63,931 nucleotides of DNA, filler included, from Octopus bimaculoides (GCF_001194135.2; 3 parts of 3 records of this genome joined end to end with filler, not necessarily neighbours in it), one strand, 5' to 3'. Shown: positions 1 through 22,000, counted from the first letter of the whole stretch. The notes: a model not told the origin generated them from the sequence alone. Translations and numbers: made by a program.

Positions 1-535
1 GAATGAAAATAACGACCTGTAGATTGGAAATCATCATCTTCATCATAGTTTTAACATCCACATTTTATTAGGTTTCATGAGTCTGGCAGAATTCATCCAT
101 ATAGATATTTGTTAAAGTTTAAGGACTTAATGTGTTTCCTTGGTCTTTAGACACCTATGGAAAGACAATTGGAGCTAAACAACAATAACTGTAATAGTAA
201 CAACAATAACCACAAAAGTCAAAGTCAATGCTGCTGCTGCTATTGGTGCTGCTGCTGCTGCTGAAGCTACCGGTGGTGCTGGTGCCACTGCCACTGCTAA
301 CCAACCATTATTTCAAAAAAGATAGATCCCAGTAATTCACCTTGAAAAACAAAACAATGATAAATCTAAAAACAACTGTTAAGGGCTCTGGTTTGAGATA
401 AAACAGAGATAACAAGCCTGTGATCAGGATGCTTGTCTGTTTCAGCTCACATTAACAGAGGATCTACTAACTTATTTCCAACAGCTACACAAACTCAATA
501 TGCTGCCTCGTATAAAATAAATAATAAGAACTAAC

Positions 536-569
536 CATGCTATCTCCACAATGTTTTTCTGCTTGAAAT
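536..569 (-). CDS. 34-nt exon type A, unit 1: (K)FQAEKHCGDSM, phase 2->0
   Basis: Minus strand ctttcttttgcag|ATTTCAAGCA...GATAGCATG|gttagt; homologous to 7497-7530 and 18246-18279. Confidence 0.8.
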
Positions 570-3500
570 CTGCAAAAGAAAGAAAGGAACACATATAATG
601 ACTATCATCATCAACATCATGATCATCATCATTTTTATGTCTCTAGACAAAGATAAACATCATAAGATGATAACTTTTTGTACAACTTCATCTTTAGACA
701 TGAATTCTCTTTTAATATTGGAACCTACATTTGGACTTCATTTCAATTAGTTTCATTTCTGAACCACATTACAAGTTTTATTCTTGGCTTAATGCATGGT
801 ACCAGACCATTAATATTTAGTAAAGACAGAAATATTGGTTTCAAATTTTGGCACAAGGCCTGTAATGTCAATTGGTACTTATTTTATCNNNNNNNNNNNN
901 NNNNNNNNNNNNNNNNNNNNNNNNNNNNNNNNNNNNNNNNNNNNNNNNNNNNNNNNNNNNNNNNNNNNNNNNNNNNNNNNNNNNNNNNNNNNNNNNNNNN
1001 NNNNNNNNNNNNNNNNNNNNNNNNNNNNNNNNNNNNNNNNNNNNNNNNNNNNNNNNNNAGAAATATCGATCTGATGTCACTTCTGGCCTTACTAATTGCA
1101 TTATTGGTAAGACGTATATGTCCTGATTCTTTGATTCTCATGAGTTTCCCACTTTGGAATTACGAAATCTTCATTCTATAGCATTATATTCATTCATTTC
1201 TCACTCCATATGTATTAAAATGTTTATTCTATCATTAACGCTTTTCAATATTCTTCCATCCCAACCTTTAGAACCTCTCAGTGTTTCGTGTACAAGGCCT
1301 TCCATAAATGCAGTTTTACTGTTCCAACTGAAACAATGCAGATGGAGATGCATAAAATATACATTTTCATCTCAAAAGATGAAGTTAATAATCTGAAAAT
1401 CTTATAATCACATCTGCAATAACTCATCTCAAATATTTATAAGAGTGTAATGGGTGCTTTTGCTTGCCACCTGAACGGTTGCTATTTATGTATCACTGGA
1501 TTGCTTTTATGTGCCAATTAACATGATACCGGTATTTGCTCAAACACAACATAATGCCAAAGATCTTGGACATAGCCTCATTTGATCAGGATAAAATATT
1601 GCGATTGATTTGCGGTGCAACTAGGGCCAAAGACTAACCTCACAGAGGCTAGAGTCATAGAGGTGATTAAAGCACTCAAGTGTGGCAAGGCAGATGAAGT
1701 GGATGAGATGTTAAGAAAAATAAAAAGAGAAGGTATTCTCTGGTTGATTTGTGTATAGCATGGACTTCTGGAAGGACACCAAAACAATGGCAGTCTGGGG
1801 TGATGATCCCAATTTTGAAAAAGGGAGAGAAAACTCAAGGAAACAAATGTCTGCACTCGGAATTCCTTGATTTGTATATGTGTTATTCCTTGTTTCTGTT
1901 CTGGGTTGATATAAAAACTATAAAAGTTACATGACAAGGACTTATTGAAATTAAAATAGTAGTAGTAGCAGCAGCAGCAGGCATCCGTCGGTCTTGAGCA
2001 GCCATGGATTTGCATCCAAAGAAATCATGTCCGCTGCTGATGGTGGTGCAGCGCCCGTGTTGGCTGTACAGGCCCACACGGCAGTGGCAGTCACAGATAC
2101 AGCGACTGCATTTGAAGGAGCTGATTTTTCCATCTGTCGAATGCACTTTTCTTTGATGGTGAGCACCAGTTCTTCTGCCACGTTCTTCATTCCCTCTCAC
2201 AGTATTTGCCTCCAGTGTGGGTGATCATTTGAAACTTGTTCGTGTTTTCCTTGTATCGTCTATCTGGATGTTTTGTCCCTTTCTTGTATCACCTAACCGT
2301 CTGGATGTTTTGTCCCTTTCTTGTATCACCTAACCGTCTGGATGTTTTGTGTTCTTGTCCCATTCTGTATTCATCATCATCATCATCGTTTAACGTCCGC
2401 TTTCCATGCTAGCATGGGTTGGACAATTTGACTGAGGACTGGCGAACCAGATGGCTACAACAGGCTCCAATCTGATTTGGCAGAGTTTCTACAGCCAGAT
2501 GCCCATCCTAATGCCAACCACTCCGAGAGTGTAGTGGATCCTTTTAGTCAGGTGGTACTGGCAACGGCCATGCTCAAAATGGTGTATTTTACATGCTACC
2601 TGCACAGGAGCTAGTCCAGCGGCACTGGCAACAACCTCGCTCGTGATCACATTTATACCTGATGATCTCCTCATTTCAATAAGGTAAAAATCCAATAAAA
2701 ACAAAATTTAATACAAAAACTTACTTAGCTCCTTCTCTGTCAATACTTTTACGGTTGCACAGGTTGTTCCAAAGACTTTTGTAACCCTATAAATATTCAA
2801 AATGTAAGCACATGTTTAGACTTTATAATAAAATTAATGATTTAACATCTGTAGTTCTATTTTACCATGTTTTGATTGACTCTTCAATCAAACAGAATAT
2901 TGCCTAATTTCCTGAAGCAATTGGTTGTTTTGCTTCTCTACATCTACAGCAACATCAAATTTCAGATGTTTGATTCAAAAACAGACAGAAACATTGGAAT
3001 AATTCCAGAACATATTCTTTCAACCAACTTTGTACTGTAGGAAAATTAAAGTAATAATTTATAAACAATGCACAAGATCACACATTTTGTAGGAGTCTAG
3101 TTATTTGGCCACAGAACTCAACTAATAAAGGAATGTGGTTTACTACTTAGGGTTATAACTTCACAATTATAAAGTAATGGCTTTGGTTCCTGGACCAAGA
3201 GGTACATTATGCCCCTGAGTAAAACAGTTCAGTATATTTCCCTCCAGTCTACTTAGCTGACAATAAGCAACAAATGAGTGGTNNNNNNNNNNNNNNNNNN
3301 NNNNNNNNNNNNNNNNNNNNNNNNNNNNNNNNNNNNNNNNNNNNNNNNNNNNNNNNNNNNNNNNNNNNNNNNNNNNNNNNNNNNNNNNNNNNNNNNNNNN
3401 NNNNNNNCAGGTCATATTATTTTGTGTGAGATAGCTATGGGGTTATTTTTATGGGTTATTTTTCTAAATACTTGACTGATAATTTTTTTCTGAAATCAGA

Positions 3501-6500
3501 AAAGATGAAAGACGAAATTGACAAATCTGGGATTTAAAATCAGGCAATAATCCTCCACTTCATTAAAAGAAGTTGCAAAATATTCATCACATCTTGAACA
3601 AGAGAGAAAAAACGTTAAGAGATTTGGATATACTGGATTTTACAGTATCCAGATATAGTATTTGTGTAAGAAAAGAAGACAAAATGGTATCACTTTCAAC
3701 AACATTGCTCATTCAGAAATGACCTGTGATTAAGCCTTCCTGATTGAATGCTCCCATATCCAGCCTGAATAATCTAACTGTTGTATATTCACACGAACCG
3801 TATATGACAATATCATTTTCAAAATAAATACTCTCATCATTGAAGTTTTAAAGCCACAGGATAATGCATGATTAATTCAAAACAATGTGAAAAAATAAGC
3901 ATCAATGTTATCTAAGGAAAAGACAAAGGCCAATACAGTTTCACAGTATGGCTGTGAGAAGGGAAAGGGCAGGCTGAGATATCACAAGGCATCCAATCAG
4001 GTGTTTTAACAATCCTGGACTGCTACTGTTATTATCAAATTCCAAAAGGGAAAGGTAAATATAATTTCACTGGTATTTGAACTCAGAATGTAGACAAATA
4101 TCACAAAGCCTTCCACCTGATGCTCAAATCATTCTGTGAATATACTGCACTCTAAAAGAATCATATCAACTAACCTCACAGTCTTTGAAGTATCTCACTG
4201 CCAGCTTCCTGCAAAAAATATACAAACAAATTTTCATCACATCATCACAATCATCAGCTCACAAAAAACTGTTATTTTGTGTTTGTATATTTTAACATTT
4301 TAATCTAAATCTACAATTCATTTGAATAGGTCAAATCTTTAATTATCACCAGGTATCATGTTTGTTGATGTCTGTAGTGTATCAAACTGGAATATATTTG
4401 AATTATAAGTCTTTTGAAGACCTTCATCGATAATTAATCTTTAGAGAACGCTTAAGGTTTTTGCAGTTTTTTTCCTAAATGTATTTGAATGAGTTTTTAT
4501 GGACCTTTCTTACAATCCTTGCTCTTCCCAATGCAGCAGATTTCAGAATTGATGCAATTCTTGTAATTATACAAAACTCAATAAGGAAGCCTTTAAGTCT
4601 GTTGGTGACGACTGAGATTATTAATTGTTCTAAGTTAATATCTTTATTGTCCCTTAACATTGTGCCACCTTGCTTCTCCTTGCCTGGCTGACTGAGGTAG
4701 CCAAGTACCACCTCTATAATAAGACAACTATCTCTGCCTCTCTGTCATACACTAACCTCTTCCCAGGCTCACAGCCACATCCCTCCATTCCTCCCCTTCT
4801 CTCAACCAGGAGCCCTTTGTCTTGCAAGTCACTTGGCAACTCCACAGGTGCTGGTGCCACATGATGGTATCTGTGCAACTGCCATGTAGGAAGTTCCCAT
4901 GCTACTGCTACATAAAATGCGCTGAGTACACTCTGTAAAGTAGTTGGCATTAAGAAGGGCTTCCAGCAGCATTGACCATGCCAAAACATACAACTGGAGC
5001 CTGCTGGGGCCCTCCAGCTTACCATCTGTTTTCCATGCTAGCATAGGTTGGACTGTCTGACTGGAGGTGGCAAGGTGGAGAGCTGCAACAGGGGTCAGTC
5101 CCCTACTTTGGTAGGTTTCTATACCTGGATGCACTTCTTAATGCCAACCACTTTACAGAGTGCACTGGGTGCTTTTAAAGTGGCACCAGCAGAGATACAT
5201 CTTACATGGCACCAGGAATGGGGAATTTTAATTTTAATCAGAGTTTAAAACCTTTATTGTTCAATTCATTTCAATGTGAACTGGGGAAAGAAATGATCTT
5301 GAACTAAAAATTCCCCCCTTATTCTGTTCTGTGGGTGTATGGAATAGGCTTGAGCCTTTTGTCTTGCAGTTAAATACATACAAACAAAAATAGTGTATTA
5401 AAAGTTGCATAACCAGGACTTACTGAACTTGAAATAATGAACATATAGATTCCATGTTGTCTCATATCAACAATGTCATGGCTTCTCTTACTATTTCCTA
5501 CATTTATATTTCCTTATATCGTTATCATATTTATACAACACAATCTCCTCATAATTCAAAGTCAAAATCAAAGTTAAGCAGAATGTTATATATTCACTTA
5601 CTTGGCTTCCACAAGTCCAAAAGCTTCTAGATGAGCATCCACATCCAAGAGATAATATTTATACTTCTAAAAAAGTTTACAATAAAAGCATTTGTTGTGA
5701 CTTTATAATAAAAACACTGATTTGATATTAATAATTCTCTTTTGGACTGGTTTCGACTCTTCGATGAAACAAAACATTACCTGACTCACAGAAACACTTT
5801 TAAAAAAAGCTTATCCTTTTCTCTATACATTCTAACTTCCAGTAAAGAGCTGAAATCATTGACTGATGGGGGATATTACCTAACTTGAGAAGTGATGCAG
5901 TAAAGGGACGTAACATAATACTACATGGCACTTCATCTTGCATTGTCAACTGATTTTGATATACCTCTCTTAAAAAAAGATTCAATGCAGTCACTAAAAG
6001 ATAGCAGCAAATATCTCCCTTAAATCTTGCAAAAAACTAAAAGGTGTGGCTGTGTGTTAAGTCTATTATATGTAGCAAGTTTATATTTGAAAGGAGGAAT
6101 GGGTACTTCTCCTACCAACCACAAACTCTACCTCTGCCTATCACCTGATATGTTATGTGTTGTCTTATCAGACATGAAAAGATGAAAATCTATGTTGACT
6201 TCAGTATGATTTTGAATTCAAAAGGTCAACAATGGTGTTATGCTGTCATGTGATCTGCTCATCTATACCTTCATCAACTATCATTATCATCATCACTTAA
6301 CATCCGTTTTCCATGCTGGCATGCATTGGACAGTATGACAGGATCCGACCAGGCTCCATTTCTCCATTGAATTGCTAATTCAAACCAATTTACAGAGTGT
6401 AGTGGATGATCTTATGCAGCATCAGCATGGCTGTGTATACACGGCACCAGCACCCATAAGCCTCCAAGATTATGAATGCTCAGCTAGAGAAGGATACAGT

Positions 6501-9500
6501 GAGCATGCCTGTATGCAAGGACAACCCCACCTCTGCTTAGCTTGACATGTCTTGTCAAGCACAGCAAGCCACCAGGAGCCCTAGTCCCTGTCCTGTCATT
6601 CCCTCCGTGAGACCCAACATCTGAGGATCCTCTCTCACCACTTCATCCCACATCTTCCTGGGTCTACCCTTTCCGTTTTAAAAGTGTTTAACATAAGTTT
6701 TCCTGGAGGGGACGATTAGTTTCCATTTTAATTTGGTAAAGCTGTTTGTTGCTTGGCCTCAACATCTGAACGAAAAAACAAATGGATGGAGAGGAAACTG
6801 TTGATTAGGTCCAAATGCATGAAGGTGAGAGAATTGATGCTAAAGGCACCCAAGAAGCAGATGGTGGTGTTAAACTGGGTGGTATGTAAACCCTGTACCC
6901 AGTTTCCTGATAAAGCAAAGGAGTTTGATGAAAACCAAACAACTGGTCATCTTATGTCCATATGAATGAAAATAACGACCTGTAGATTGGAAATCATCAT
7001 CTTCATCATAGTTTTAACTTCCACATTTTATAGCTTTCGCGGGTTTGGCAGAATTTATTCATATAGATATTTGTTACAGTTTAAGGACTTAATGTGTTTC
7101 CTTGGTCTTTAGACACCTATGGAAAATCAATTGGAGATAAACAAAAATAAATGTAATAGTAAAAACAACACCCACAAAAATAACAATCAATGCTGCTGCT
7201 GCTAGTGGTGGTGGCACTACTACTGAAGCTGTTGGTGGTGCTGCTGCTGCTATCCCCACTATTCTAAAAAAGAAGACCCCAACAATTCACCTTCAAAACG
7301 AAAATGATGAAAAATCTAAAAACGACTGTTAAGGGCTCTGGTTTGAGATAAAATAGAGATGAGAGATAACAAGCCTGTGATCAGGATGCTTGTCTGTTTC
7401 AGCTCACATTAACAGAGGATCTACTAACTTATTTCCAACAGCTACACAAACTCAATATGCTGCCTCCTATAAAATAAATAAATAAGAAGAACTAACCTCA
7501 TTTTCAAAAAAATGTCTTTTTACTAGAAATCTGCAAAAGAAAGAAAGGAATACATATAATGACTATCATCATCAACATCATGATCATCATCATTTTTATG
7601 TCTCTAGACAAAGATAAACATCATAAGATGATAACTTTTTGTACAACTTCATCTTTAGACATGAATTCTCTTTTAATATTGGAACCTACATTTGGACTTC
7701 ATTTCAATTAGTTTCATTTCTGAACCACATTACAAGTTTTATTCTTGGCTTAATGCATGGTACCAGACCATTGATATTTAGTAAAGACAGAAATATTGGT
7801 TTCAAATTTTGGCACAAGGCCTGTAATGTCAATTGGTATTTATTTTATCAACCCTCAAAAGAAAGAAGATGACTTTGCTGAGATATAAACTCAGAATGTG
7901 AAGATGGACAAAATNNNNNNNNNNNNNNNNNNNNNNNNNNNNNNNNNNNNNNNNNNNNNNNNNNNNNNNNNNNNNNNNNNNNNNNNNNNNNNNNNNNNNN
8001 NNNNNNNNNNNNNNNNNNNNNNNNNNNNNNNNNNNNNNNNNNNNNNNNNNNNNNNNNNNNNNNNNNNNNNNNNNNNNNNNNNNNNNNNNNNNNNNNNNNN
8101 NNNNNNNNNNNNNNNNNNNNNNNNNNNNNNNNNNNNNNNNNNNNNNNNNNNNNNNNNNNNNNNNNNNNNNNNNNNNNNNNNNNNNNNNNNNNNNNNNNNN
8201 NNNNNNNNNNNNNNNNNNNNNNNNNNNNNNNNNNNNNNNNNNNNNNNNNNNNNNNNNNNNNNNNNNNNNNNNNNNNNNNNNNNNNNNNNNNNNNNNNNNN
8301 NNNNNNNNNNNNNNNNNNNNNNNNNNNNNNNNNNNNNNNNNNNNNNNNNNNNNNNNNNNNNNNNNNNNNNNNNNNNNNNNNNNNNNNNNNNNNNNNNNNN
8401 NNNNNNNNNNNNNNNNNNNNNNNNNNNNNNNNNNNNNNNNNNNNNNNNNNNNNNNNNNNNNNNNNNNNNNNNNNNNNNNNNNNNNNNNNNNNNNNNNNNN
8501 NNNNNNNNNNNNNNNNNNNNNNNNNNNNNNNNNNNNNNNNNNNNNNNNNNNNNNNNNNNNNNNNNNNNNNNNNNNNNNNNNNNNNNNNNNNNNNNNNNNN
8601 NNNNNNNNNNNNNNNNNNNNNNNNNNNNNNNNNNNNNNNNNNNNNNNNNNNNNNNNNNNNNNNNNNNNNNNNNNNNNNNNNNNNNNNNNNNNNNGAAACA
8701 AAGAAAAAACAAAACATGTTATTGTGAATCTGTGTAGTTTGGTAGAGTTTTAGAGTAATTAAGAATGAGGCCAGACTGGAGTTTATATTCTGGCGGTCCT
8801 TGTGGTCTAAATGGACACCATACAGATTCAAGAACGAAAGCTACATAACCTTCATAAAAGAGGATCACACCTTCAACAGGTCTGAGGTGTAGAATTCCAC
8901 TTGGGGCATTTGCTTGCTCATTTCCATATGCATAACAATTTGTCTCTTTGTTAAATATTATCAATTAAGCACCAAAGATAACCTTGCAGCATGTAGAGTC
9001 CATTGACTTTGGCTCTTGTTGTACATCACAAGAACGTATTCCCAAAGATGATCATGTCTCTGAAGACTGTTCCTTAGAATTCACTTTAGCCATATTCCTG
9101 ACAATAGCATCTGGCTACACTAGCAGTCTAGGCATGACTTTTTGTCAGAACATAAGGTATAGCAACTGAGAAGTGAAAACCATTTTAACTGACCAGCTGT
9201 GGCTACTTAACTCTTTGGCATTTAAAGCAGTTATATCCAGCCCGAATGTTCCATCTGATTTATGTTGAAGATAGCCAGATCTGACATTTCACACCTACCC
9301 TACAATCTCATTCTAAAAATAAACAAACATCTCATGAAATATGCAAAGCTACAAGATAAACCATGATCAATTCAAAATGNNNNNNNNNNTGCCATGCAGT
9401 AATTGAGGATATAATTTATATATTTTTTATGTTTGTTTTGGTCATCAGACTGCAACCATGCTGGGGCATTACCTTCAAGAATTTTGGTCAAAGGTATGAA

Positions 9501-12068
9501 CCCTTGAACATATAATTGAGTAAAGACAGAGAGAGATATGGAGGGTGGTAAGTGCCAGGGCATACCCATGAGGTTTGAAGGTCATAATATAAGTGGCAGG
9601 ATATTACCAAAGAAGCGTGATTAGAGAGTGGGGAGAAGTGAGAGGTGAAAGCTTGGGTGCATATACAGTGGGGAAGGGCTACCAGGTAGCAATGATACAG
9701 AGAAACAGGGCTGTGAGGACAAGATTGAGGAGAGAGAGGTAAACATAATGCCCAAAGGAGGATATATGAGGAAGAGATGTGAAGATGTAGATTGCTTTAT
9801 TGTGGTTGGGTGTGTGGAAAGGTTTATTGTTACATGTGAGTGGAGCACACAGGTCAGGGGCTAGTGGGTAGCAATGATACAGTGAGGAAGGAGGAAATGC
9901 AAAGAAGGGAAGAAGGTAGATTGACTTGTTAAAGTAGGGTGTGAGAAATGTTTTCTTGTTACACAGTGCTTCAAGATCTCAGTTTTGTAGACATGGGTAG
10001 GTCTTCTCAAGAACATCACATCACCAAACATTTCGGTCCATTGTTATTTCTTCTGTGAAGCCCAACATTCTCAGATCCATCCTTACCCCTTCATCCCATG
10101 TCTTCCTGGGTCTTCCTACTCTGCAGGTACCATCCGTTCAGTAACTAACACTTCCTTATGCAGCTGTCCTCATTCACACGCATCACATGCCCAGACCAAT
10201 TTAGTCTTCTCTCTTTTATGATACATTTCATTCTACTTATCCCCAACATTTCTCTCAATATATTTNNNNNNNNNNNNNNNNNNNNNNNNNNNNNNNNNNN
10301 NNNNNNNNNNNNNNNNNNNNNNNNNNNNNNNNNNNNNNNNNNNNNNNNNNNNNNNNNNNNNNNNNNNNNNNNNNNNNNNNNNNNNNNNNNNNNNNNNNNN
10401 NNNNNNNNNNNNNNNNNNNNNNNNNNNNNNTGTGCATGCACACTGATGTTGCACATCCACAAAAGCATAACACCTTCATTTCTCTCCAGTCTACGCATGT
10501 CTTTTGCATTCTGAGCTCGTGTCTCAATAACATGGAGTATAACCATTCACACACAAGCATCATACAACCTACCTTTCACTCTGAGAGAGAGACCTTTTAT
10601 TGTGAAAACAGGTAATAGCTCTCTCAACTTTCTCCATCCTATTCTTATTGTAGAATAGTTTCAAATCCTGGCACAAGGCCAGCAACTTCAGGAGAGGGCT
10701 AAGTCAATTACATTGCCCCCAACTGCTCAGATTTTACTTATTCTATCAAACGTGAAAGGATGAAAGTTAAAGTCAACCTCAACAGAATTTGAACTCAGAA
10801 TGTAGAGATGGACAAAATGCCACTAAGCAATATACCTGTTGTGCTAATGGTTCTGCCAGTTCACCAGATCATCATCTTTGTCGTTAAATGTCCACTTTAA
10901 TACTGCATAGGTTGGACCGTTTGACTGATGACTGGCAAACCAGGAGGTTGCACCAAGCTCCAATCTGGTCTGGAAAAGGTTTCTACACCTGGATGCCCTT
11001 TCTAATGCCACCCACTCCAAGAGTGTAGCAGGTACTTTTTATGTGCCACCGGCATGGGGGGCCAATCAAGCAGTACTGGCACTGACCACACAGAAATGGT
11101 GCTTTTCATGTGCCACCGGCACGAGAGCCAGTCAGGCAGCACTGACAAGGTACATGCTCGAACGGTGCTTTTTATGTGCCAGCGACTTGTGACCAGTCAT
11201 GGGGCACTGGCATTAACCATGCTCGAATGGCGTTCTTAATGTGGCATGGGTGCAAGTCAAGTAGTACTGGCATCAGCCACAACAATGATTTCACTTGACT
11301 CAGCAGGTCTTTTCAAGTACATTTTATTGCCCAATGATTGAAGGTTACTCTTAAATGGGCCAGTTACAGAAAACTGACATAGGCCACGGCTATGGTCTCA
11401 CTAGGCTCGCTGAGCCTTCTCAAGCACAGCATATCTCCAAAGGTCTTGGTCAGTTGTCAGTGCCTCTGTGAGGCCCAACATTCAAAGGTCGTGCTTCACC
11501 ACTTCATCCCAGGCCTTGCTGGGTCTTCTTTCTCCGAATGTTCCCTCCACTGTTACGGTGTGACACTTATTCACACAGCTATCCTCATCCATATGCTACA
11601 AATGACCATACCAGCACAGTTGTCTCTCTTGCCCACCACATCTGATGCTTTTTATGTCCAACTTTTCACTCAGGGTGTTTACACTATGCTATGTATGCAC
11701 ACTAATCTTACACATCCAGCAGAGCATACTAGCTTCATTTCTTGTAAGCTTACGCATGTCCTCAACAGTCACAGCCTATATTGTGACCAAAGTTATACAA
11801 CACAATCTCCTCATTTCAATTAAGTAAAAATCCAATTTAAACAAAATGTGATAAAAATATTTACTTAGCTCTGTCTTTGTCAATATCTCTATTGTCCAGT
11901 TCAATGCAAAAATCTCCGTAATCCTATAAATATTCAAAATGAAAACATATGTTTAGACTTTTATGATAAAATTAATGATTTAACATTGGAGCCTGGTGTA
12001 GCCATCTGGTTCGCCAGTCCTCAGTCAAATTGTACAACCCATGCTAGCATGGAAAGTGGACGTTAAAC

Positions 12069-12121
<53 letters not shown>

Positions 12122-15100
12122 GTTCTATTTTACCATGTAACTGACGTTGAGTGTGCCAACTCTGAGGGTGTGGGAGGTGTGGGCCTGTGAGACCCTGGGA
12201 TGAGGGACAGCAGTGTCATGTACCTGAAAAGAAAGCCTGCATTTGGCAGAACTCATAGACAAACAATAGCCTACAACCTGCATACACTACACCATCTTTA
12301 TTGCAAAATAAACTTTTTAAATGCATATCAATGCTTGTGCCTGCTTTGTGGGTGTGAAAGTGGATGGCTGTATTTTAAATGGATGTGGGCATGGTTGGGT
12401 GGGTAAGACATTCAATTTGAAACCACATGATTCTTGATTCAATCCCAATGCACAGCACCTTGGGCAAGTGTTTTCTACCACAGNNNNNNNNNNTGTAGAA
12501 GACCAGCTGTTGCATCTACATTGAAGCCTCCCTCTGTCTACAGCACAATGTTATCTAAGGAAAAGACAAAGGCCAATACAGTTTCACAGTATGGCTGTGA
12601 GAAGGGAAAGGGCAGGATGAGATATCACAAGGCATCCAATCAAGTGTTTTAGCAATCCTGGACTGCTATTATTATTATTACCAAATTCAAAAAGGGAAAG
12701 GTACAATTAACTGCATTGATATTTGAACTCAGAATGTAGACAACCAAGACAAATATCGCTAAGCCTTCCACCCGATGCTCTAATCACTCTGTCAACAACA
12801 TACTGGATTGTAAATAAATCATATCAACTAACCTCAAAGTCTTTGAAGTATTTTTCTGCAAATTTTCTGCAAAAGAAAGAAACAAATTTACATCACAATC
12901 ATCATCATTATTTCTACATCAGCTCACAAAAAGAACCATTATAGAACTGTTATTTTGTGTTTGTAAATTTATTATTTCAATCTAAATCAACAATACATTT
13001 GAATAGGTTCAATTCCTGATTATCACTAAGCATTATATTTGTGGATGTCTGCATCGTATCAAACAGGAATGTATTTGAAATATCAGGTTGAGTAAAAAGT
13101 AATCAATGTTTTGAAACATGAAGGATTTGTACCAAATTTTTGCAGAGAATAAAATTTTCTTTTCACATTTTTTTTTTTGCAATTGTCTCTTTAATACAGA
13201 CATAGACTTGTCAAATGCATCAATAAATTAACATTGATATCTTTTTCACCGTTGTTATAACCATCTGAAATGGAACTGTCGAAGTGTGATATTCAAGCAA
13301 TTTTGTTATTGTTATAAACCCAAACTGGAATATCAAAATTTAAAAGGTTTTAATTGACTAAAAATACAGCAATCTACAATAGAAACAAAGATTGCTAAAT
13401 TGTAAGCAAAACCAAACTTCAACGCAATAACAGTTTTATGAAGCGAGTTGCTACAGTCTCGACTAACTAAAATCTAACACTGAACACGTCCTGCCGCAAA
13501 CAGAACAGAACTCCACACAGTTGCACTGCAAGCAAATAACAGCAATCGAGACAATCAAAGTCATGTGATCAAGACTAAAATCACAACAGTTATTCAACTT
13601 CTAAAAAGGATGTAAGGCACCTGAAACTGCTCGTGATATCAATGAAACATTTGGTGAGGAAATGACCAGTGAGTGGTCAGTTTGAAAATAGTTTAAATGA
13701 TTTCGCAGTGGAGACCTGACCGTTGAAGATTGTAAGCGTAATGGATGCCCATCTGTCATTGATGACAGTCAATTAAAGACTGTCATTGAGAAAGATCCAC
13801 GTAAGCCCACTCGAAAATTGGCAAAAGTACTTCGAGTTAGCAGAAAACTACCTGCAACAATTTGCATGCAATTGGAAAATCCAAAAAAGCTCAATAGATG
13901 GGTACCAAATGATTTGAATGAAAATCAGAAAATGCGCAGATATGAAATTTGCTCATCGCTTCTCCATTACCAGTCTGATCCATTTCTTGACCGTAGTGTA
14001 ACTTGCGATGAAAAGGGGGTTCTGTACAATAACAAAAAATGATCTTCACAGTAGTTGGTCCAAAATGAAGTCCTGAAAACTTTGGCTACACCTGAGCTCT
14101 TCAAAAAGATGGTTGTGGTGACTGTTTAATGGTGTACTGCTGGACTCATCCACTAGAACTTCTTAAAACCTGGAAAAACCATTAGTGCAGAAACATATTG
14201 CCATGAAATTGCCAAAGTGAATGGAAAGCTGCTATTCCTCTGTCCCAGACTGGTCATCAGAAGAAGGACAATTATTCTTCATGACAATGCTCAACCACAT
14301 GTTTCACTAATGATTCTCCAGAAGCTGAGGCAGCTTGGATATGAAGTTCTTCCCCACCCAGCTTATTCCCCAGACCTTTATCCTATCAACTACCACTTTT
14401 TCAAGCACCTTGATGGTTTCCTGCGAGAGAAAGCGTTCAAAAATCAAACCAATACCGAAAGAGCATTCAAAGAGTTCATAAGATCCGGAACTCCAGATTT
14501 TTATGTTACTGGAATAAACAAAGTTGTAACTTGTTGGCAAAAATGTGTTGATTGGTATTTGATGAATAAAATTTCCGTGCTGTTGAAATATATTGCGATA
14601 AATTTCATGTTTCAAAACATTGCTTACTTTTTACTCAGTCTAATATAATCTTTTGAAGATCTTCAGTGATTATTAATCTTTAGAGAATGCTGAAGGTTTT
14701 GCCAGTTTTTTTTCTAAATGTATTTGAATGAGATTTTATGGACATTTATAGGTAAATAGTATTATTCTTTCTACTTATTTTTATTATCATTCACAGTGTG
14801 CTGAATGTTTTACATTCAGAATCAGCATTCATGATAACTGGTCACAACCAGTTTCCTTAGATATCAAGGACCTTTCTTACAATCCTTGCTCTTCCCAATA
14901 CAGAAGATTTCAGAATTGATGCAATTCTTGTAATTATACAAAACTCAATAAGGGAGCCTTTAAGTCTGTTGGTGACGACTGAGATTATTAATTGTTCTAA
15001 GTTAATATCTTTATTGTCCCTTAACATTGTGCCACCTTGCTTCTCCTTGCCTGGCTGACTGAGGTAGCCAAGTACCCTCTCTATAATAAGACAACTATCT

Positions 15101-18100
15101 CTGCCTCTCTGTCATACACTAACCTCTTCGCAGTCTCACAGCCATATCCCTCAATTCCTCCCCTTCTCTTAACTAAGAGCCCTTTGTCTTGCAAGTCATT
15201 TGGCAACGCCACAGGTGCTGGTGCCACATGAGAGCACCTGTGCAACTGCCATGTAGGAAGTTCCCATGCTACTGCCACATAAAATGCGCTGAGTACACTC
15301 TGTAAAGTAGTTGGCATTAGGAAGGGCTTGCAGCAGCAGAGACCATGCCAAAACATACAACTGGAGCCTGCTGGGGCCCTCCAGCTTGCCAGTTCCTGCC
15401 AAAATATCCAATCCATGCCATTAAATGATGATGGTGATACATGATGATCATGATGAAGATGATGATGGTAATGATGATGCTGATTACCATAAAACAAACA
15501 CTTTTGAAAAATTTCTAAAGGTCTTTACTTGTAGGTAAAAAAAGTTTTACTTTTTATAATTGAATCAGGGCAAAATGAAGACAGACCAGGCTGAGATGAC
15601 AATCATGTTAACTGACAGATCTTGCAGATCTAAATAGGATTATTATATGTAATGGTATATATCTTTACATGACTTTGTAGCACAGAAGATTTAAAAGATA
15701 TAATTTCTTATACATTATTCGTTATTTGTATCAAATTTAAGATCTGTTTTCAATTTCAGTTTCATAAAAATGACACATTTTCATCATAAAGCAATCAAGA
15801 TTGGCAGATGATTTTATCCAAAGTTTGATGTCATCATCATCAACATTGTTATCATCATTGAACATCTGTTTTTATGCAAGCATAGGTTGGACAGTTTGAC
15901 TGGAACTGAAAGGTAGAGAGCTGCAACAGGCACCAGTCCTCTGCTTTAGCAAAGTTTCTACAGCTGGATGCACTTCCAACCACTTTACAGAGGGCATTGG
16001 GTACTTTTAAAGTGGCACTTTTAAAGATACATCTTACATGGCACCAGGAAATGGGGAATTTTAATTTTAATCAGAGTTTAAAACCTTTATTGTTCAATTC
16101 ATTTCAAATGTGAACTGGGGAAAGAAATGATCTTGAACTAAAAATTCTCCCCTGTCTCTGTTCTGTGGGTGTATGGAATAGGCTTGAGCCTTTTGTCTTG
16201 CAATTAAATACATACAAACAAAAATAGTGTATTAAAAGTTGCATAACCAGGACTTACTGAAGTTGAAATACTGAACATATAGATTCCATGTTGTCTCATA
16301 TCAACAATGTCATGGCTTCTCTTACTGTTTCCTACATTTATATTTCCTTATATCGTTATCATATTTATACAACACAATCTCCTCATAATTAAATATAAAA
16401 TCAAAGTTAAGCNNNNNNNNNNNNNNNNNNNNNNNNNNNNNNNNNNNNNNNNNNNNNNNNNNNNNNNNNNNNNNNNNNNNNNNNNNNNNNNNNNNNNNNN
16501 NNNNNNNNNNNNNNNNNNNNNNNNNNNNNNNNNNNNNNNNNNNNNNNNNNNNNNNNNNNNNNNNNNNNNNNNNNNNNNNNNNNNNNNNNNNNNNNNNNNN
16601 NNNNNNNNNNNNNNNNNNNNNNNNNNNNNNNNNNNNNNNNNNNNNNNNNNNNNNNNNNNNNNNNNNNNNNNNNNNNNNNNNNNNNNNNNNNNNNNNNNNN
16701 NNNNNNNNNNNNNNNNNNNNNNNNNNNNNNNNNNNNNNNNNNNNNNNNNNNNNNNNNNNNNNNNNNNNNNNNNNNNNNNNNNNNNNNNNNNNNNNNNNNN
16801 NNNNNNNNNNNNNNNNNNNNNNNNNNNNNNNNNNNNNNNNNNNNNNNNNNNNNNNNNNNNNNNNNNNNNNNNNNNNNNNNNNNNNNNNNNNNNNNNNNNN
16901 NNNNNNNNNNNNNNNNNNNNNNNNNNNNNNNNNNNNNNNNNNNNNNNNNNNNNNNNNNNNNNNNNNNNNNNNNNNNNNNNNNNNNNNNNNNNNNNNNNNN
17001 NNNNNNNNNNNNNNNNNNNNNNNNNNNNNNNNNNNNNNNNNNNNNNNNNNNNNNNNNNNNNNNNNNNNNNNNNNNNNNNNNNNNNNNNNNNNGGCTGTGT
17101 GTTAAGTCTATTATATGTAGCAAGTTTATATTTGAAAGGAGGAATGGGTACTTCTCCTACCAACCACAAACGCTACCTCTGCCTATCTCCTGAATTGTTG
17201 TATGTTGTGTTATCAGACATGAAAAGATGAAAATCTATGTTGACCTCAGCACAATTCTGAATTCAGAAATTCAAGAAAGATGTTATGTTATGCTCAGCTA
17301 AATCTTCATCATCATCATTTAAAGGATTGGATAGTCTGATAGGAGCCGACCAAGCTCCATTTCTCAGTGTTTGCAGGGTTTCTACAGCTGGATGCCCTTC
17401 CTAAAGCCAACCAATTTACAGAGTGCACTGGATGCTTTTATGCAGCACCAAAATGGGTGTGTATATGTGGCATTGGACTGGGTGGATTTTGTATGGCACC
17501 AGCACCCATGAGTCTCCAAGATTACAAATGCTGAGCTAGAGAAGGATGCAGTAGGCATTCCTGTATACAAGGACAACCACACCTCTACTTAGCTTGATGT
17601 CTCTTGTCAAGCACCGCAAACCACCAGGAACCCCGGACCCTGTCATTCCCTCCATGAGACCCAACTTCTGAAGATCCTCTCTCACCACTTCATCCCGCAT
17701 CCTGCTGGGTCTACCCCTTCCACTTTAAAAGTGTTTTAAATAACTTTTTCTGGAGGGGTGAGTTAGTTTCCATTTTCATTTGGTAAAGCTGTTTGCTGTT
17801 TGACCTCAACATCTGAAGAAAAAAACAAATGGATGGAGAGGAAACTGTTGATTTGGTCCAAAAGCAAGAAGGTTAGAGAATTAATGCTAAAGGCACCCAA
17901 GAAGCAAATGGTGGTGCTAAACAGGGTAGCACTGAAAACCAGTAGCCAGATTTCTGCTACTGGTGGTGGTGATGCTTCTGTACACATTCTTATTTTAAAA
18001 AAGGAAGACTCCCCTTCCTCCATACACAAAATGATTCACCTTTGAAAACAAAAAATTCTAAATCTAAAAACGACTGTTAAGGGCTCTGGTTTGATGAAAT

Positions 18101-18994
18101 AAAACAGACAAGAGATAACAAGTCTGTGGTTAGGATGCTTGTCTGTTTCAACTCACATTAACAGAGGATCTACTAACTTATTTCCAACAGCTACACAAAC
18201 GCAACATGTTGCCTCATATAAAATAAATAAATAATAAGAACTAACCTTGCTCTCTCCAATATAGTCTTTTGCTAGATTTCTGCAAAAGAAATAAAGGGAC
18301 ACATATCATTATCACTATCATCATCAACATCATCATCATCATTTTTATGTCTCTATAAATAAACAATTATCTCATGAAATTCTCAAAGCTACAAGATAAA
18401 CCATGATCAATTCAAAATGATGTGAATAAAGAAGCTTTACATTTCCCAGAGTAATCTGATTGCTAAACGGTTAATCATTGTATATTTTTTTAGTATCATC
18501 ATATTTAATGATGCATATTTTTAAGTCCATGTAGAGTGTATTATTTTCAAAATACAACTCATAAGGATCAGTTTGCCACTCCTTCTCGTTCATCAAGTCT
18601 GCCATGCAGTAATTGAGGATATAATTTATATATTTTTTATGTTTGTTTTGGTCATCAGACTGCAACCATGCTGGGGCATTACCTTCAAGAATTTTGGTCA
18701 AAGGTATGAACCCTTGAACATATAATTGAGTAAAGACAGAGAGAGATATGGAGGGTGGTAAGTGCCAGGGCATACCCATGAGGTTTGAAGGTCATAATAT
18801 AAGTGGCAGGATATTACCAAAGAAGCGTGATTAGAGAGTGGGGAGAAGTGAGAGGTGAAAGCTTGGGTGCATACAGAGACGTGTGGACTACCAGATAGAC
18901 AAAGCCAACCTCAACAGAATTCAAAATGTAAATATGGACGAAATGCCACTATGCATTGTGCCTGTTGTGCTAACAATCCTGTTACCTCACCATC

Positions 18995-19032: not shown

Positions 19033-22000
19033 NNNNNNNNNNNNNNNNNNNNNNNNNNNNNNNNNNNNNNNNNNNNNGCGTGTGTGTGTGTGTGTGTGTG
19101 TGTGTATGCATATATATATATATATATATATCAGTATATTGTGATCACATTTATACAGCACAATCTCCTCATTTTAATAAAGTAAAAATCCAATTTAAAT
19201 AAAACGTAATAGAAATATTTACTGAGCTCTTCTTTTGTCGACATCTCCTCTACTTATGTCTTTCAAAAGGTTACTGTAACCCTATAAATATTCAAAATGA
19301 AAGCATATGTTTAGACTTTATAATAAAATTAATGATTTAACATCAGTAGTTCTATTTTACCATGTAATTGACTCTTCAATCAAAATGGATATTGCCTGAC
19401 TTCCTGAAGCAATTGGTTGTTTTGCTTCTCTACATCCACAGGAAGATCAACTTTCAGATGTTTGATTCAAAAACAGACAGAAACATTGGAATAATTCCAG
19501 AACATATTCTTTCAACCAACTTTGTACTGTAGGAAAGTAATAATTTCTAAACAAAGCACAAAATCACACATTTTGTAGGAGTCTAGTTATTTGCCCACAG
19601 AACTCAACTAATAAAGGAATGTGGTTTACTACTTAGGGTTATAACTTCACAATTATAAAGTAATGGCTTTGGTTCCTGGACCAAGAGGTACATTATGCCC
19701 CTGAGTAAAACAGTTCAGTATATTTCCCTCCAGTCTACTTAGCTGACAATAAGCAACAAATGAGTGGTGCAGGAGCACTCTCTCAATCCAGCTATCATGT
19801 CCTCACTGTTGGGTGAAAGGTAGGATGGTTGAGAAGTTATTTGTATTGAATTCTCATTGAATAGAAACATAAAACACTTAGTGAACGTACAGTTTCATGC
19901 TACCAGGTCATATTATTTTGTGTGAGATAGCTATGGGGTTATTTTTATGGGTTATTTTTCTAAATACTTGACTGATAATTTTTTTCTGAAATCAGAAAAG
20001 ATGAAAGACGAAATTGACAAATCTGGGATTCAAAATCAGGCAATAATCCTCCACTTCATTAAAAGAAGTTGCAAAATATTCATCACATCTTGAACAAGAG
20101 AGAAAAAAACGTTAAGAGATTTGGATATACTGGATTTTACAGTATCCAGATATAGTATTTGTGTAAGAAAAGAAGACAAAATGGTATCACTTTCAACAAC
20201 ATTGCTCATTCAGAAATGACCTGTGATTAAGCCTTCCTGATTGAATGCTCCCATATCCAGCTCAAATATTCTACCTGTTCTATATTTACATGCATCTAAC
20301 TTCTCATACCTACCCTACAATGTCATCCTAAAAGTAAATAATATGATCATTGAAGTCTTAAAGCTACAAGATAATGCATGATTAATTCAAAACTGTGAAT
20401 AAATAAGCATTACCTTTGACAGAGGAATCTGAATTGTTTAAAGGATTAAACAAGAATAACAAAAATAGGAAAATTAAATAGAAGTCCAATACAAGAAACA
20501 AAGGCTTTCTCCTTCATCAGTTTCAATATCAAAGCTGCTGTGTCTACCAACACAACTTCAATAACTTTACTTGTGTTATCAAGCTTCAATAAATGGGATG
20601 CTACACTGAACTCACTGGCATTTCAATTCAGAAATTGTAAACATTGAACTAGTAAATCGAAATCTTGTATACTATGAAGTCTGTTCCCCTTAATGCTTCA
20701 CCAAATTACCAATATTCAAAAAACATGTAAAATTCCAAAACAAAGCAGAGAAGCAAAATAAGTTTGGAGAAGGGAATATATTTCATCTCTAGTCCCTAAC
20801 AGAACAAGGCCCTCACAGAAGGCAGCATATAATCATTTCATTTGCTCCATCATAGCAACTAAATCCTCGTCGACTGCCATCTTTGAAATGGCATCCACTT
20901 GCACTACGTTCTTAAGTTTCAGACATCGATCCAAAAAAAAGACAATACTTTTATGTATTTTTATAAGTCTGTCAGATGAAGCAAGTTAGTTTCTGTTGTG
21001 CGAGAGTATGATACCCTCTGGCGAGAAAGGACTGGACCATTACATATAAATAGTAGCCGTCTGAGTAAGTGAGTATTTCATGCTTGTTCCACAGTTTGTG
21101 TGTTGTTAGTTCAAAGTTTACAGTTTGAGTTAGCATCTTGGATTGTTGGTTCTTAAAACAATGATGTTACATTTGTGTGGTTACATTCTATTTGTTTCGA
21201 TTATATTGTTATTACACTGTTGCAGTGCATGTTTTTTTATCCACAAGGGTATAACATCTGTTGACAAGGATTGTTCGAAACTCACAATGGTTATTTGACA
21301 ATTTCTGCATTATGGCAAACCTATTAGCCACAGTAGTATAGTTTCAAGAGAAGCAACAGGAACAACCACAGGAATTGCAAAAACAAATACTACAACATCA
21401 ACAATTAACTGAGTTACAGTCAGCGAAGTCCAGTAATTTCAAAGCACCTGAAGATAGAGAAATTCAGGCAAAGATTATCTCGATAATGGAGCAAGTGAAT
21501 CAGGATTTATCTCAACAGACCATCACAGAAGAATATCAGACTCTGGTAAATCTTGAACTTGATGTGAAAAAATTACAACATAAAGACTCTGCAAAAATTC
21601 AAATGTATCGTCCCAGGTGGCAAAATCAAAAACAAAGTGTCAGGGCCCAATCCATGTTATGGTTGTGGGGAGGGGGGCCTACACTACAAAAAGGATTGTC
21701 TGTTTAAAAACAAAAAAGTGCTATAGTTGTCAGAAGCTGGGACACATGAGTCATTGTGGAACTATGAGTCTCAAACACAGAAAGTTCCAAGGTGTTTTCA
21801 GTGGAGAGTGATTGTGATGGGAAAACAAAAAAATTTATGCACATAAAAATAAATGATATGGATACCAAATTACAGTTAGACATAGGTAGTAACATCACGA
21901 TTATAAAAGCGGATACTTGGAAAATATTGACAAACTGAGATTATGTAAAACAGCAAGAATAGCAGGTGGTTTAACAGGCGATAAATTACATTTCATGAGC

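What the first reader, a model, noticed from the sequence alone, without database searches (positions are those of the whole stretch)
536..7849. Exons diverge 10-40x more than their own flanking introns (type A, unit 1 vs 2)
Seen, by manual count: exon 536-569 vs 7497-7530 differ at 13/34 nt, and 9 of 11 codons change, all to a different amino acid (FQAEKHCGDSM vs FLVKRHFFENE). The adjacent intron 570-888 vs 7531-7849 differs at only 3/319 nt. This inverts the normal pattern. Established: the same signature (conserved introns, hypervariable exons) is known for conotoxins, snake-venom PLA2s and some immune or gamete-recognition genes. Inference: strong diversifying selection, or selection resisting gene-conversion homogenisation, on a ligand-binding surface.
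Basis: partly seen in the sequence, partly recalled or inferred. Interest (0 to 1): 0.9.

Follow-up and report, generated by a model that had tools for sequence, protein, structure and literature searches.

The report
Old exons, homogenised introns, octopus gene
A giant repeat-protein gene found only in Octopus is built from tandem four-exon units whose introns are far more alike than their tiny exons, most likely because gene conversion keeps copying the introns while each exon stays distinct, not because the exons are hypermutating.

Summary
Exon 536-569 and exon 7497-7530 (minus strand) differ at 13/34 nt and 9/11 codons. The adjoining intron differs at 3/319 nt (Fisher p about 1e-12).

The window is Octopus bimaculoides DNA. 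It carries 11 micro-exons of LOC106881215, a fragment of the ortholog of O. sinensis LOC115212235 (1935 aa, about 33 tandem 32-33 aa helical repeats). Each repeat is encoded by two exons (59-65 nt plus 34 nt). A four-exon unit of 7-11 kb is repeated at least three times.

Every exon class is an island of divergence: about 37% for exons against about 8% for introns. The 10-40x ratio holds only for this one pair.

- dN/dS is about 1.
- Third-position transitions are 3.6x more diverged than introns.
- The exons match the O. sinensis and O. vulgaris proteins collinearly (72% against 45% or less out of register), so they were already distinct about 34 Mya.

This resembles the primate LW/MW opsin genes.

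Caveats: the 99-100% blocks lie beside assembly gaps, and no DNA from another species could be obtained.

The parts
536..569 (-). 34-nt exon, class A, unit I (FQAEKHCGDSM), phase 1; one of the two exons in the finding
   Evidence: AG|..|GT sites and open frame. Present in XP_014787006.1. Best match at O. sinensis residues 962-972, NLAEKYCGDSN, 7/11.
7497..7530 (-). 34-nt exon, class A, unit II (FLVKRHFFENE); the other exon in the finding
   Evidence: Best match at O. sinensis 897-907, ILAKRHFFDNQ, 7/11.
18246..18279 (-). 34-nt exon, class A, unit III (NLAKDYIGESK)
   Evidence: Keeps the frame in the spliced chain.
2725..2786 (-). 62-nt exon, class L62/59, unit II (GYKSLWNNLCNRKSIDREGA-)
   Evidence: O. 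sinensis 941-961, 13/21.
11865..11923 (-). 59-nt exon, class L62/59, unit III (DYGDFCIELDNRDIDKDRA-)
   Evidence: O. sinensis 877-896, 18/20.
19223..19281 (-). 59-nt exon, class L62/59, unit IV (GYSNLLKDISRGDVDKRRA-)
   Evidence: Collinear with O. vulgaris 954-973.
4175..4208 (-). 34-nt exon, class Y, unit II (KLAVRYFKDCE)
   Evidence: O. sinensis 930-940, 9/11.
12833..12866 (-). 34-nt exon, class Y, unit III (KFAEKYFKDFE)
25163..25196 (-). 34-nt exon, class Y, unit IV (KLAKTYFEGHK)
5602..5666 (-). 65-nt exon, class L65, unit II (KYKYYLLDVDAHLEAFGLVEA-)
   Evidence: O. sinensis 908-929, 15/22.
26552..26616 (-). 65-nt exon, class L65, unit IV (EYKKFEWEVDAYQQNFGQAEA-)
16413..17092 (.). Assembly gap that should contain the 65-nt exon of unit III
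   Evidence: Unit II 5470-5579 aligns to 16304-16412 and unit II 6048-6242 aligns to 17093-17287. The exon lies between these two blocks in unit II.
570..888 (-). Intron block 99.1% identical to 7531-7849 (3/319)
7531..7849 (-). Paralogous intron block of unit II, partner of 570-888
431..535 (-). Intron block on the other side of the exon, 98% identical to its unit II partner (2/105)
2643..3902 (-). Unit II intron stretch homologous to unit IV 19141-20410. It is 90-92% identical overall and 100% identical on both sides of gap 3283-3407. The only strong dips are at the exon and at 3767-3842.
4501..5024 (-). Intron block shared by units II, III (14868-15391) and IV (25570-26091) at 95-97% identity
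889..1058 (.). Assembly gap inside the intron between exons 2725-2786 and 536-569
   Evidence: The flanking exons are adjacent in the protein models.
3283..3407 (.). Assembly gap inside the intron between exons 4175-4208 and 2725-2786. Collinear with a gap-free paralog.

Best explanation
What the window is. It is part of one very large Octopus-restricted gene: O. bimaculoides LOC106881215, a fragmentary model of the ortholog of O. sinensis LOC115212235. The O. sinensis protein has N-terminal UBA-like domains, then about 33 tandem 32-33 aa all-helical repeats, then an Ala/Glu/Lys-rich tail.

How the gene is built. Each protein repeat is encoded by a long exon (59, 62 or 65 nt) plus a 34-nt exon. 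Two such repeats form a four-exon genomic unit of 7-11 kb, tandemly repeated. The window holds parts of four units.

Shown. The exons of different units are old and individually conserved. They already differed before O. bimaculoides split from O. sinensis and O. vulgaris.

Inferred. The introns of different units are kept similar by repeated non-allelic (intragenic) gene conversion or unequal exchange between neighbouring units. Conversion tracts that would overwrite an exon are either removed by purifying selection on position-specific repeat sequences, or aborted because heteroduplex cannot extend through an exon that is 25-45% diverged. The result is a mosaic of intron blocks at 85-100% identity, interrupted at every exon by a sharp peak of divergence. 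The inverted pattern therefore reflects 'young' introns, not unusually fast exons.
For: 1. The exons are real and belong to one reading frame.
- All 11 have AG/GT splice sites, and the spliced chain stays open.
- The chain matches XP_014787006.1 at 96%.

2. Orthology.
- Six consecutive exons (11865-11923 down to 536-569) have their best hits at collinear O. sinensis positions 877, 897, 908, 930, 941 and 962. That is 69/96 residues, 72% identity.
- The best out-of-register alignment is 45% or less.
- The upstream four exons are collinear with O. vulgaris 921-984, leaving exactly the 22-aa space expected for the exon hidden in the gap.
- The species split is dated at about 34 Mya (PMC10700109).

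3. Silent sites are older than the introns.
- Third-position transitions are 25/149 = 16.8% against intron transitions 355/7705 = 4.6% (p = 4e-8).
- Nei-Gojobori pS is 0.24-0.64 against intron divergence of 0.01-0.15.

4. There is no excess of replacement changes. dN/dS is 0.15-1.8, and codon positions differ equally.

5. Intron identity is mosaic and topologies conflict.
- Units I-II go from 7% (1-200) to 1.9% (431-535) to 0.9% (570-888); p = 2e-4.
- Units II-IV are 100% identical around gap 3283-3407 but differ at 10-15% elsewhere.
- The closest pair is III-IV in most blocks but II-IV in 6443-6906.

6. A rate argument (inference). If the 570-888 block were as old as its exons (at least 34 My), 0.9% divergence would imply a rate of 1.4e-10 per site per year or less. 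That is far below usual animal rates.

7. A documented precedent has the same diagnostic. In primate LW/MW opsins the introns are homogenised by conversion, there is a divergence peak at exon 5, and the exons cluster by ortholog (PMC3924837, section 3.2).
Against: - The second half of the diagnostic could not be tested. That test asks whether introns are more alike between paralogs within a species than between orthologs across species. The O. sinensis gene spans 310 kb and its DNA was not delivered.
- At codons whose amino acid is conserved between paralogs, only 10/52 use a different codon. In the class containing the finding's exons the figure is only 2/26. That is close to intron divergence and is what recent duplication plus replacement-driven change would give. 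These codons do cluster at exon edges, which may lie inside conversion tracts.
- Conversion tracts ending within a few nucleotides of both sides of a 34-nt exon need either many events or a heteroduplex barrier. Neither is demonstrated.
- The 99-100% identical blocks abut N gaps in a short-read assembly. Gap closing with pooled reads could have erased real differences.
- Orthologous repeats are only 48-72% identical after about 34 My, so the exons do evolve fast. Some positive selection is not excluded.
Confidence: 0.6

Rival explanations
1. Recent duplication of the units followed by accelerated, selection-driven or mutation-driven change confined to the exons. This is the conotoxin / snake-venom PLA2 type and was the reader's first reading.
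For: - The exon islands are sharply bounded by the splice sites.
- For the class containing the finding's exons, dN/dS by Nei-Gojobori is 1.3-1.8 or undefined in some pairs.
- Conserved-residue codons in that class show only 2/26 silent differences, similar to introns.
- Orthologous repeats are only 48-72% identical between congeners, so the protein evolves fast.
Against: - The exons are collinear with, and closest to, their positional counterparts in O. sinensis and O. vulgaris. The units therefore predate a split of about 34 My, while some of their introns differ by 0-1%.
- Pooled third-position transitions are 3.6x intron transitions.
- Codon positions are equally diverged.
- Overall dN/dS is about 1, and 0.15-0.46 for the Y and L65 classes.
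- There is no signal peptide or Cys framework. The protein has UBA-like domains, which suggests an intracellular protein.
Confidence: 0.12
2. Assembly artefact. The near-identical introns come from repeat collapse, or from gap closing or scaffolding with pooled reads, in the short-read O. bimaculoides assembly. The true introns would be much more diverged.
For: - There are nine N gaps in 29.8 kb.
- The 99% block 570-888 ends at a gap.
- Both flanks of gap 3283-3407 are 100% identical to unit IV.
- 9390-9663 is 100% identical to 18600-18873 and sits next to a 10-N gap.
Against: - Most intron blocks differ at 4-15% between units, with unit-specific indels and transposon insertions. They are therefore distinct copies, yet still 3-4x less diverged than the exons.
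- Block 570-888 is contiguous with a unique exon and carries 3 private differences.
- An artefact can explain the extreme 10-40x ratio. It cannot explain the general pattern.
Confidence: 0.13
3. The introns are functionally constrained, so paralogous introns never diverged while weakly constrained exons did. Candidate functions are splicing control of micro-exons, hosted non-coding RNAs, or partner strands for RNA editing.
For: - 34-nt micro-exons in long introns usually need strong flanking signals.
- The 20-40 nt next to every splice site are nearly invariant across units, and are even similar between exon classes.
- Cephalopod RNA editing is known to constrain flanking sequence (general knowledge; not tested here).
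Against: - Similarity extends over hundreds of nucleotides and includes SINE-like and transposase-like sequence.
- Identity is mosaic rather than graded from the splice sites.
- No Rfam family reaches threshold in the window.
- RNA folds around two exons are no more stable than shuffles: z = -0.2 and +0.9.
Confidence: 0.05

Closest known systems
Primate LW/MW (red/green) opsin genes: introns homogenised by gene conversion, with a divergence peak at exon 5 (Shyue et al. 1994; Teshima & Innan 2008; reviewed in PMC3924837)
   Same: Paralogous introns are less diverged than the exons they flank. Exon sequences group with orthologs in other species. Sharp divergence peaks sit inside long low-divergence tracts. 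The accepted explanation there is conversion plus selection against converting functionally distinct sites.
   Different: The opsins are two separate genes about 24 kb apart, with one or two peaks caused by a few tuning residues. Here the duplicates are repeat units inside one gene. Every one of the 11 exons is a peak, and whole 34-65 nt exons differ at 24-44%. Intron grouping by species is shown for the opsins but could not be tested here.
Iterated homogenised introns in spider silk genes (flagelliform spidroin; Argiope MaSp2, PMC9779670)
   Same: A repetitive protein is encoded by tandem exon-intron units within one gene. Introns of the same class are strongly similar across units. [quoted passage not shown] Here the core unit is four exons and four intron classes.
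   Different: In spidroins the exons are homogenised together with the introns, and intron identity averages 97.6%. Here the exons are not homogenised, intron identity is a mosaic of 85-100%, and the introns are kilobases long and full of transposon remnants.
Accelerated evolution of exons in conotoxin and snake-venom PLA2 genes
   Same: Introns are conserved and coding exons are highly diverged between paralogs.
   Different: Those cases are secreted, Cys-framework toxins from recent lineage-specific gene duplications with dN/dS above 1. Here dN/dS is about 1, silent sites are also diverged, the copies have positional orthologs in other species, and the protein looks intracellular (UBA-like domains).
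Islands of divergence persisting under gene conversion in GOT1 paralogs of Tigriopus californicus (PMC3728101)
   Same: The concept is the same: short diverged islands survive inside converted paralogous sequence and mark selected regions.
   Different: That case is a two-gene system in which conversion acts on coding sequence. It is not an intragenic repeat array.

Membership tests
Duplicates under gene conversion with selected divergence peaks (opsin LW/MW type) | Paralogous non-coding sequence is less diverged than the coding sequence it flanks | tested here: met
   Exons differ at 37% and introns at 8.1% pooled. Units I-II differ at 38% in the exon and 1.2% in the flanks, p = 1e-12.
Duplicates under gene conversion with selected divergence peaks (opsin LW/MW type) | Exon sequences are closer to orthologs in other species than to paralogs in the same genome | tested here: met
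   At protein level only. Identity is 72% to collinear O. sinensis repeats and 45% or less out of register. Paralogs within the window share 2-5 of 11 residues.
Duplicates under gene conversion with selected divergence peaks (opsin LW/MW type) | Intron sequences are closer between paralogs within a species than between orthologs across species | not testable with these tools
   The O. sinensis locus spans 310 kb and no DNA was returned. No cephalopod genome collection is on hand.
Duplicates under gene conversion with selected divergence peaks (opsin LW/MW type) | Mosaic tracts: significant heterogeneity of divergence along the duplicate, and conflicting topologies | tested here: met
   Units I-II differ at 0.9% in one block and 7% in another, p = 2e-4. 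There are 100% identical blocks among blocks at 10-15%. The closest pair changes between blocks.
Accelerated-evolution toxin-type genes (conotoxin / PLA2) | dN/dS clearly above 1 between paralogs | tested here: not met
   Values are 0.15-1.8, about 1 overall, with equal divergence at all three codon positions. The samples are small.
Accelerated-evolution toxin-type genes (conotoxin / PLA2) | Silent sites are as conserved as the introns | tested here: inconclusive
   Third-position transitions are 3.6x intron transitions, which argues against. Conserved-residue codons differ in only 10/52 cases, and 2/26 in one class, which argues for.
Accelerated-evolution toxin-type genes (conotoxin / PLA2) | Recent, lineage-specific duplicates | tested here: not met
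   There are collinear counterparts in O. sinensis and O. vulgaris.
Iterated homogenised introns of repetitive-protein genes (spidroin type) | Tandem exon-intron units within one gene, with introns of one class similar across units | tested here: met
   There are four intron classes, each recurring in units I-IV at 85-100% identity.
Iterated homogenised introns of repetitive-protein genes (spidroin type) | Coding repeats are homogenised together with the introns | tested here: not met
   Exons of one class differ at 24-44% of nucleotides.
TPR or another known helical repeat family (my first impression by eye) | Match to a family profile or to a solved repeat fold | tested here: not met
   - Pfam: no repeat family.
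- PDB sequence search: nothing.
- AlphaFold model with alignment: pLDDT 85, all helical.
- Foldseek against the PDB: best E = 2.2, TM 0.35 or less.
- hhalign of the repeat against the protein's own UBA-like domains: probability 0.3%.

The most novel reading that the evidence does not exclude
The micro-exons of this Octopus-restricted repeat protein might really change faster than their neutral surroundings. The cause could be an exon-targeted mutational process or pervasive diversifying selection on a binding surface. This would act in addition to, or instead of, intron homogenisation, and would make the gene a non-toxin, intragenic analogue of conotoxin-type accelerated evolution. The low silent divergence at conserved codons and the fast divergence of orthologs (48-72% identity) leave room for this reading.
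Probability: 0.12. Interest if true: 0.75.

Novelty: new member of a known kind. Interest (0 to 1): 0.4.

Why it matters
If confirmed with long reads and cross-species introns, this would be an unusually clean natural example of conversion acting on introns while exons escape it. The same gene carries dozens of exon 'islands' in a 300-kb array, with four alternating intron classes.

It would allow three things to be measured inside one locus: conversion tract lengths, the barrier effect of sequence divergence, and selection on individual protein repeats.

The authors of the Argiope spider silk study (PMC9779670) said they knew of no other eukaryotic gene with alternating homogenised introns. 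This gene would be a second case in a different phylum, with the difference that its exons are not homogenised.

It is also a practical warning. In such arrays intron similarity badly underestimates the age of a duplication, and an 'inverted' exon/intron divergence pattern is not by itself evidence of positive selection. The gene itself, an Octopus-only UBA-like plus helical-repeat protein, is uncharacterised.

Tried and rejected
- TPR-like or Sel1-like repeat (my impression by eye). Rejected. Pfam, PDB sequence search and Foldseek gave nothing.
- Repeats derived from the protein's own N-terminal UBA-like domains. hhalign probability 0.3%.
- A SEP-like domain in the ortholog's C-terminal part (recalled resemblance). 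No Pfam hit at E of 1 or less, so it is not claimed.
- Mutually exclusive alternative exons. Rejected. All the exons are included, in order, in the O. sinensis and O. vulgaris proteins.
- Introns conserved because they host known RNAs or stable structures. Rfam gave only a sub-threshold mir-297-like hit on a simple repeat. Fold z-scores were -0.2 and +0.9.
- Obtaining genomic DNA for the models or orthologs. P0001 and P0002 are not on record. The P0003 gene range is too long.
- Gapped global alignment of exons understated exon differences, so it was replaced by codon-registered comparison.
- The Nei-Gojobori pS values are inflated by multi-hit codons. I therefore added two cleaner silent-site measures, which partly disagree with each other.
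- Pfam confirmation of the transposon remnants was weak or absent.
- Wider homolog searches found nothing outside Octopus. The hit P0004 (E = 1.5e-4, acidic low-complexity repeats) is probably spurious.
- No paper mentions these loci.

Full report
WHAT THE WINDOW IS

The sequence is AT-rich eukaryotic DNA with nine N gaps. It contains large direct repeats with a period of 7-11 kb: 1-888 matches 6964-7849, 2643-3902 matches 19141-20410, and 3898-7210 matches 12542-17954 and 24872-29404.

A protein search with spliced candidate exons hit Octopus bimaculoides XP_014787006.1 (LOC106881215, 'uncharacterized', 129 aa, 96% identity) and A0A0L8FTR5_OCTBM. The gene is on the minus strand.

CHECKING THE OBSERVATION

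On the minus strand, 536-569 and 7497-7530 are 34-nt exons with identical acceptor (tttcttttgcag) and donor (gttagt) contexts. They differ at 13/34 nt. In phase 1 they encode FQAEKHCGDSM and FLVKRHFFENE, with 9/11 residues different.

The intron block 570-888 vs 7531-7849 differs at 3/319 nt, and the other flank 431-535 at 2/105. Fisher's test for exon against flanks gives p = 1.2e-12.

The '10-40x' ratio applies only to these immediate flanks. The same pair differs at 7% in 1-200 and at 25% in the microsatellite-rich 201-360.

THE GAPS

- Gap 3283-3407 is bridged by the gap-free paralog 19670-20006. That paralog is 100% identical on both sides and has 135 nt where the window has 125 N.
- Gap 889-1058 cannot be bridged by paralogy. 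It lies in an intron whose flanking exons are joined in the RefSeq model and are adjacent in the O. sinensis protein.
- No reading frame crosses either gap.

ANATOMY OF THE GENE

A scan for AG...GT open segments, combined with the unit alignments, gave 11 exons in four classes:
- Class A, 34 nt: 536-569, 7497-7530, 18246-18279.
- Class L62/59: 2725-2786, 11865-11923, 19223-19281.
- Class Y, 34 nt: 4175-4208, 12833-12866, 25163-25196.
- Class L65: 5602-5666, 26552-26616.

The unit III copy of L65 should lie in gap 16413-17092.

Read 5' to 3' on the minus strand, the order is L65, Y, L62/59, A, repeated. A long exon plus a 34-nt exon makes 93-99 nt, so each pair encodes one 31-33 aa repeat. The spliced chain stays open. 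About 170 codons without a stop in sequence of 35% GC, together with invariant splice sites, makes chance very unlikely (inference).

WHAT THE PROTEIN IS

An exhaustive search with the 139-aa model found O. sinensis XP_036358878.1 (LOC115212235, 1935 aa, 12 matched stretches, E = 2e-146). A further search found an O. vulgaris protein of 2076 aa. Nothing was found outside Octopus.

The O. sinensis gene spans 310 kb. Its protein has:
- UBA-like domains at the N-terminus (Pfam UBA_4 at 33.8 bits and UBA_8 at 29.3 bits, both above cutoff).
- About 33 tandem repeats with consensus xYxxFxxELx(8-11)AKxLAxxxFxxxx.
- An Ala/Glu/Lys-rich tail.

An AlphaFold model of 3.3 repeats, built with a paralog alignment, is confidently all-helical (pLDDT 85). 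It has no significant PDB fold match, and there is no Pfam or PDB sequence relative for the repeat. My first impression of a TPR-like repeat is therefore not supported. A link to the protein's own UBA-like domains is not supported either.

THE PATTERN IS GENERAL BUT WEAKER THAN IN THE FINDING'S PAIR

Sliding-window identity between units dips at every exon. Exons of one class differ at 24-44% of nucleotides. Their 100-nt flanks differ at 1-30%, and the upper values come from flanks that run off the homologous block. Homologous intron blocks differ at 3-15%. Pooled, exons differ at 164/443 = 37% and introns at 624/7705 = 8.1%, a ratio of about 4.6.

IS IT DIVERSIFYING SELECTION?

Three results argue against it.
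- Nei-Gojobori dN/dS between paralogous exons ranges from 0.15 to 1.8 and is about 1 overall.
- Differences are spread evenly over codon positions: 0.37, 0.37 and 0.34.
- Third-position transitions, almost always silent, reach 16.8% against 4.6% for intron transitions (p = 4e-8, although the pairs are not independent). Silent sites in the exons are therefore older than the introns look.

One result cuts the other way. Among codons whose amino acid is the same in both paralogs, only 10/52 differ, and only 2/26 in the class that contains the finding's exons. These codons cluster at exon edges, which may lie inside converted tracts, but the discrepancy is real and is recorded as evidence against my preferred explanation.

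CROSS-SPECIES EVIDENCE

Six consecutive window exons, from 11865-11923 down to 536-569, have their single best matches at O. sinensis residues 877, 897, 908, 930, 941 and 962. This is perfectly collinear, with 69/96 identical residues (72%). As a block the identity is 70.8%, against 45% for the best out-of-register placement.

The four upstream exons are less conserved (48%). Their best placement in the O. vulgaris protein (921-984) is nevertheless exactly collinear, leaving 22 residues for the exon hidden in the gap.

The two exons of the finding correspond to different O. sinensis repeats:
- FQAEKHCGDSM matches NLAEKYCGDSN.
- FLVKRHFFENE matches ILAKRHFFDNQ.

They share 7/11 residues with those counterparts but only 2/11 with each other. 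The units, with their distinct exons, therefore existed before O. bimaculoides separated from the O. sinensis/O. vulgaris clade. That split is dated at about 34 Mya (PMC10700109, citing Jiang et al. 2022).

If the 570-888 intron block were equally old, its 0.9% divergence would imply a rate of about 1.4e-10 per site per year or less, which is implausibly low (inference).

MOSAIC INTRONS

Intron identity is patchy:
- Units I-II go from 7% to 1.9% to 0.9% divergence along 900 nt (p = 2e-4).
- Units II-IV are 100% identical around gap 3283-3407 but differ at 10-15% elsewhere.
- One 524-nt block is 95-97% identical in all three units.
- The closest pair of units is III-IV in most blocks but II-IV in 6443-6906.

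This is what repeated, independent conversion tracts produce.

BEST EXPLANATION

The exons are old, position-specific and moderately conserved. The introns are repeatedly homogenised by intragenic gene conversion or unequal exchange between neighbouring units. The exons escape because conversions that overwrite them are selected against, and/or because heteroduplex cannot pass through 25-45% divergence.

The same logic and the same diagnostic (exons group by ortholog, introns are kept alike) are documented for primate LW/MW opsins (PMC3924837). Iterated homogenised introns inside repetitive genes, including alternating intron classes, are documented for spider silk genes (PMC9779670), although there the exons are homogenised too.

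I give this explanation a confidence of 0.6. The intron half of the diagnostic could not be tested, and the most extreme identities sit beside assembly gaps.

RIVALS

- Recent duplication plus exon-specific acceleration: 0.12.
- Assembly artefact as the main cause: 0.13. It can explain the 99-100% blocks but not the 4-15% blocks, which are still 3-4x less diverged than the exons.
- Functional constraint on the introns: 0.05. No Rfam family reaches threshold, there is no unusual RNA stability, and the similarity includes transposon-like sequence.

VERDICT

The conotoxin-like reading is not supported.

It is a new and rather striking instance of a known evolutionary mechanism, in an uncharacterised gene found only in Octopus.

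Noticed in passing
9390-9663 and 18600-18873; also 3180-3282 and 3408-3510 vs 19670-19768 and 19904-20006: Paralogous stretches of 100-274 nt are 100% identical and directly adjoin N gaps. They could be very recent conversion. They could also be a repeat contig, or pooled reads, used twice by the scaffolder or gap closer.
   Followed up: partly
16257-16289 (-) and 122-154 (-); cryptic twin at 7084-7116 (-): The first exon (MESICSVFQLQ) and last exon (VSKDQGNTLSP, then stop) of RefSeq model XP_014787006.1 have no counterpart in the O. sinensis or O. vulgaris proteins. The first lies just below the gap that should hide the real 65-nt exon. An identical copy of the last exon in unit II is not used. 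Both ends of the model look like artefacts of the fragmented assembly.
   Followed up: partly
O. vulgaris protein P0005, roughly residues 845-985, vs O. sinensis P0003 after residue 832: The O. vulgaris protein has 141 aa (about four repeats) more than the O. sinensis protein, although the two are about 99% identical elsewhere and the species split only about 2.5 Mya. This is either a repeat-number change or a collapse in one assembly or annotation. The window's upstream exons match the extra O. vulgaris repeats best.
   Followed up: partly
13701-14645 (+) and 26970-27900 (+): Transposase-like ORF remnants sit at homologous positions of units III and IV. By motif they look mariner-like (recalled, e.g. 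HDNAQPH...PYSPDL). They are only about 80% identical, while neighbouring blocks are 93-96% identical. Pfam gave no significant hit.
   Followed up: partly
21342-23150 (+): ORFs resembling retroelement gag and integrase lie inside the long intron of unit IV. Pfam support is weak and sub-threshold: zf-CCHC and Integrase_H2C2, both at E = 0.004. This insertion is absent from unit II.
   Followed up: partly
1609-1931 (+): A short ORF fragment looks like reverse transcriptase by eye (…PILKKGEKTQ…). It lies in the unit I/II intron and has no paralogous counterpart in the other units. Pfam does not support it.
   Followed up: partly
2371-2641, 10868-11028, 11985-12085 (-), 15851-15971, 22043-22247, 29640-29819 and others: There are many copies of a short interspersed repeat (…catcatcatcgtttaacgtccgctttccatgctagcatgggttggac…). 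One copy interrupts unit IV exactly where its class A exon would be expected, which pushes that exon beyond the window edge.
   Followed up: no
about 20300 in unit IV (within 20264-20352), and near 9330: A 14-nt segment has good splice-like borders (ag|GATGACATTGTAGG|gtaggt) and is conserved in two copies. It is destroyed in unit II (3767-3842), where it makes the only strong non-exon dip in identity. It is out of frame with the repeat and is probably a pseudo-exon or nothing.
   Followed up: no
5499-5590 vs 11777-11853 and 19119-19198: The introns flanking the two different long-exon classes (L65 and L62/59) are still 78-80% identical to each other, although the exons they flank are barely alignable. 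This is the same inverted pattern, one level deeper in the repeat hierarchy.
   Followed up: no
19086-19157 (+): There is a sub-threshold Rfam hit to mir-297 (35.5 bits against a gathering score of 90) on a simple-repeat stretch next to gap 19033-19077. It is almost certainly a low-complexity artefact.
   Followed up: yes
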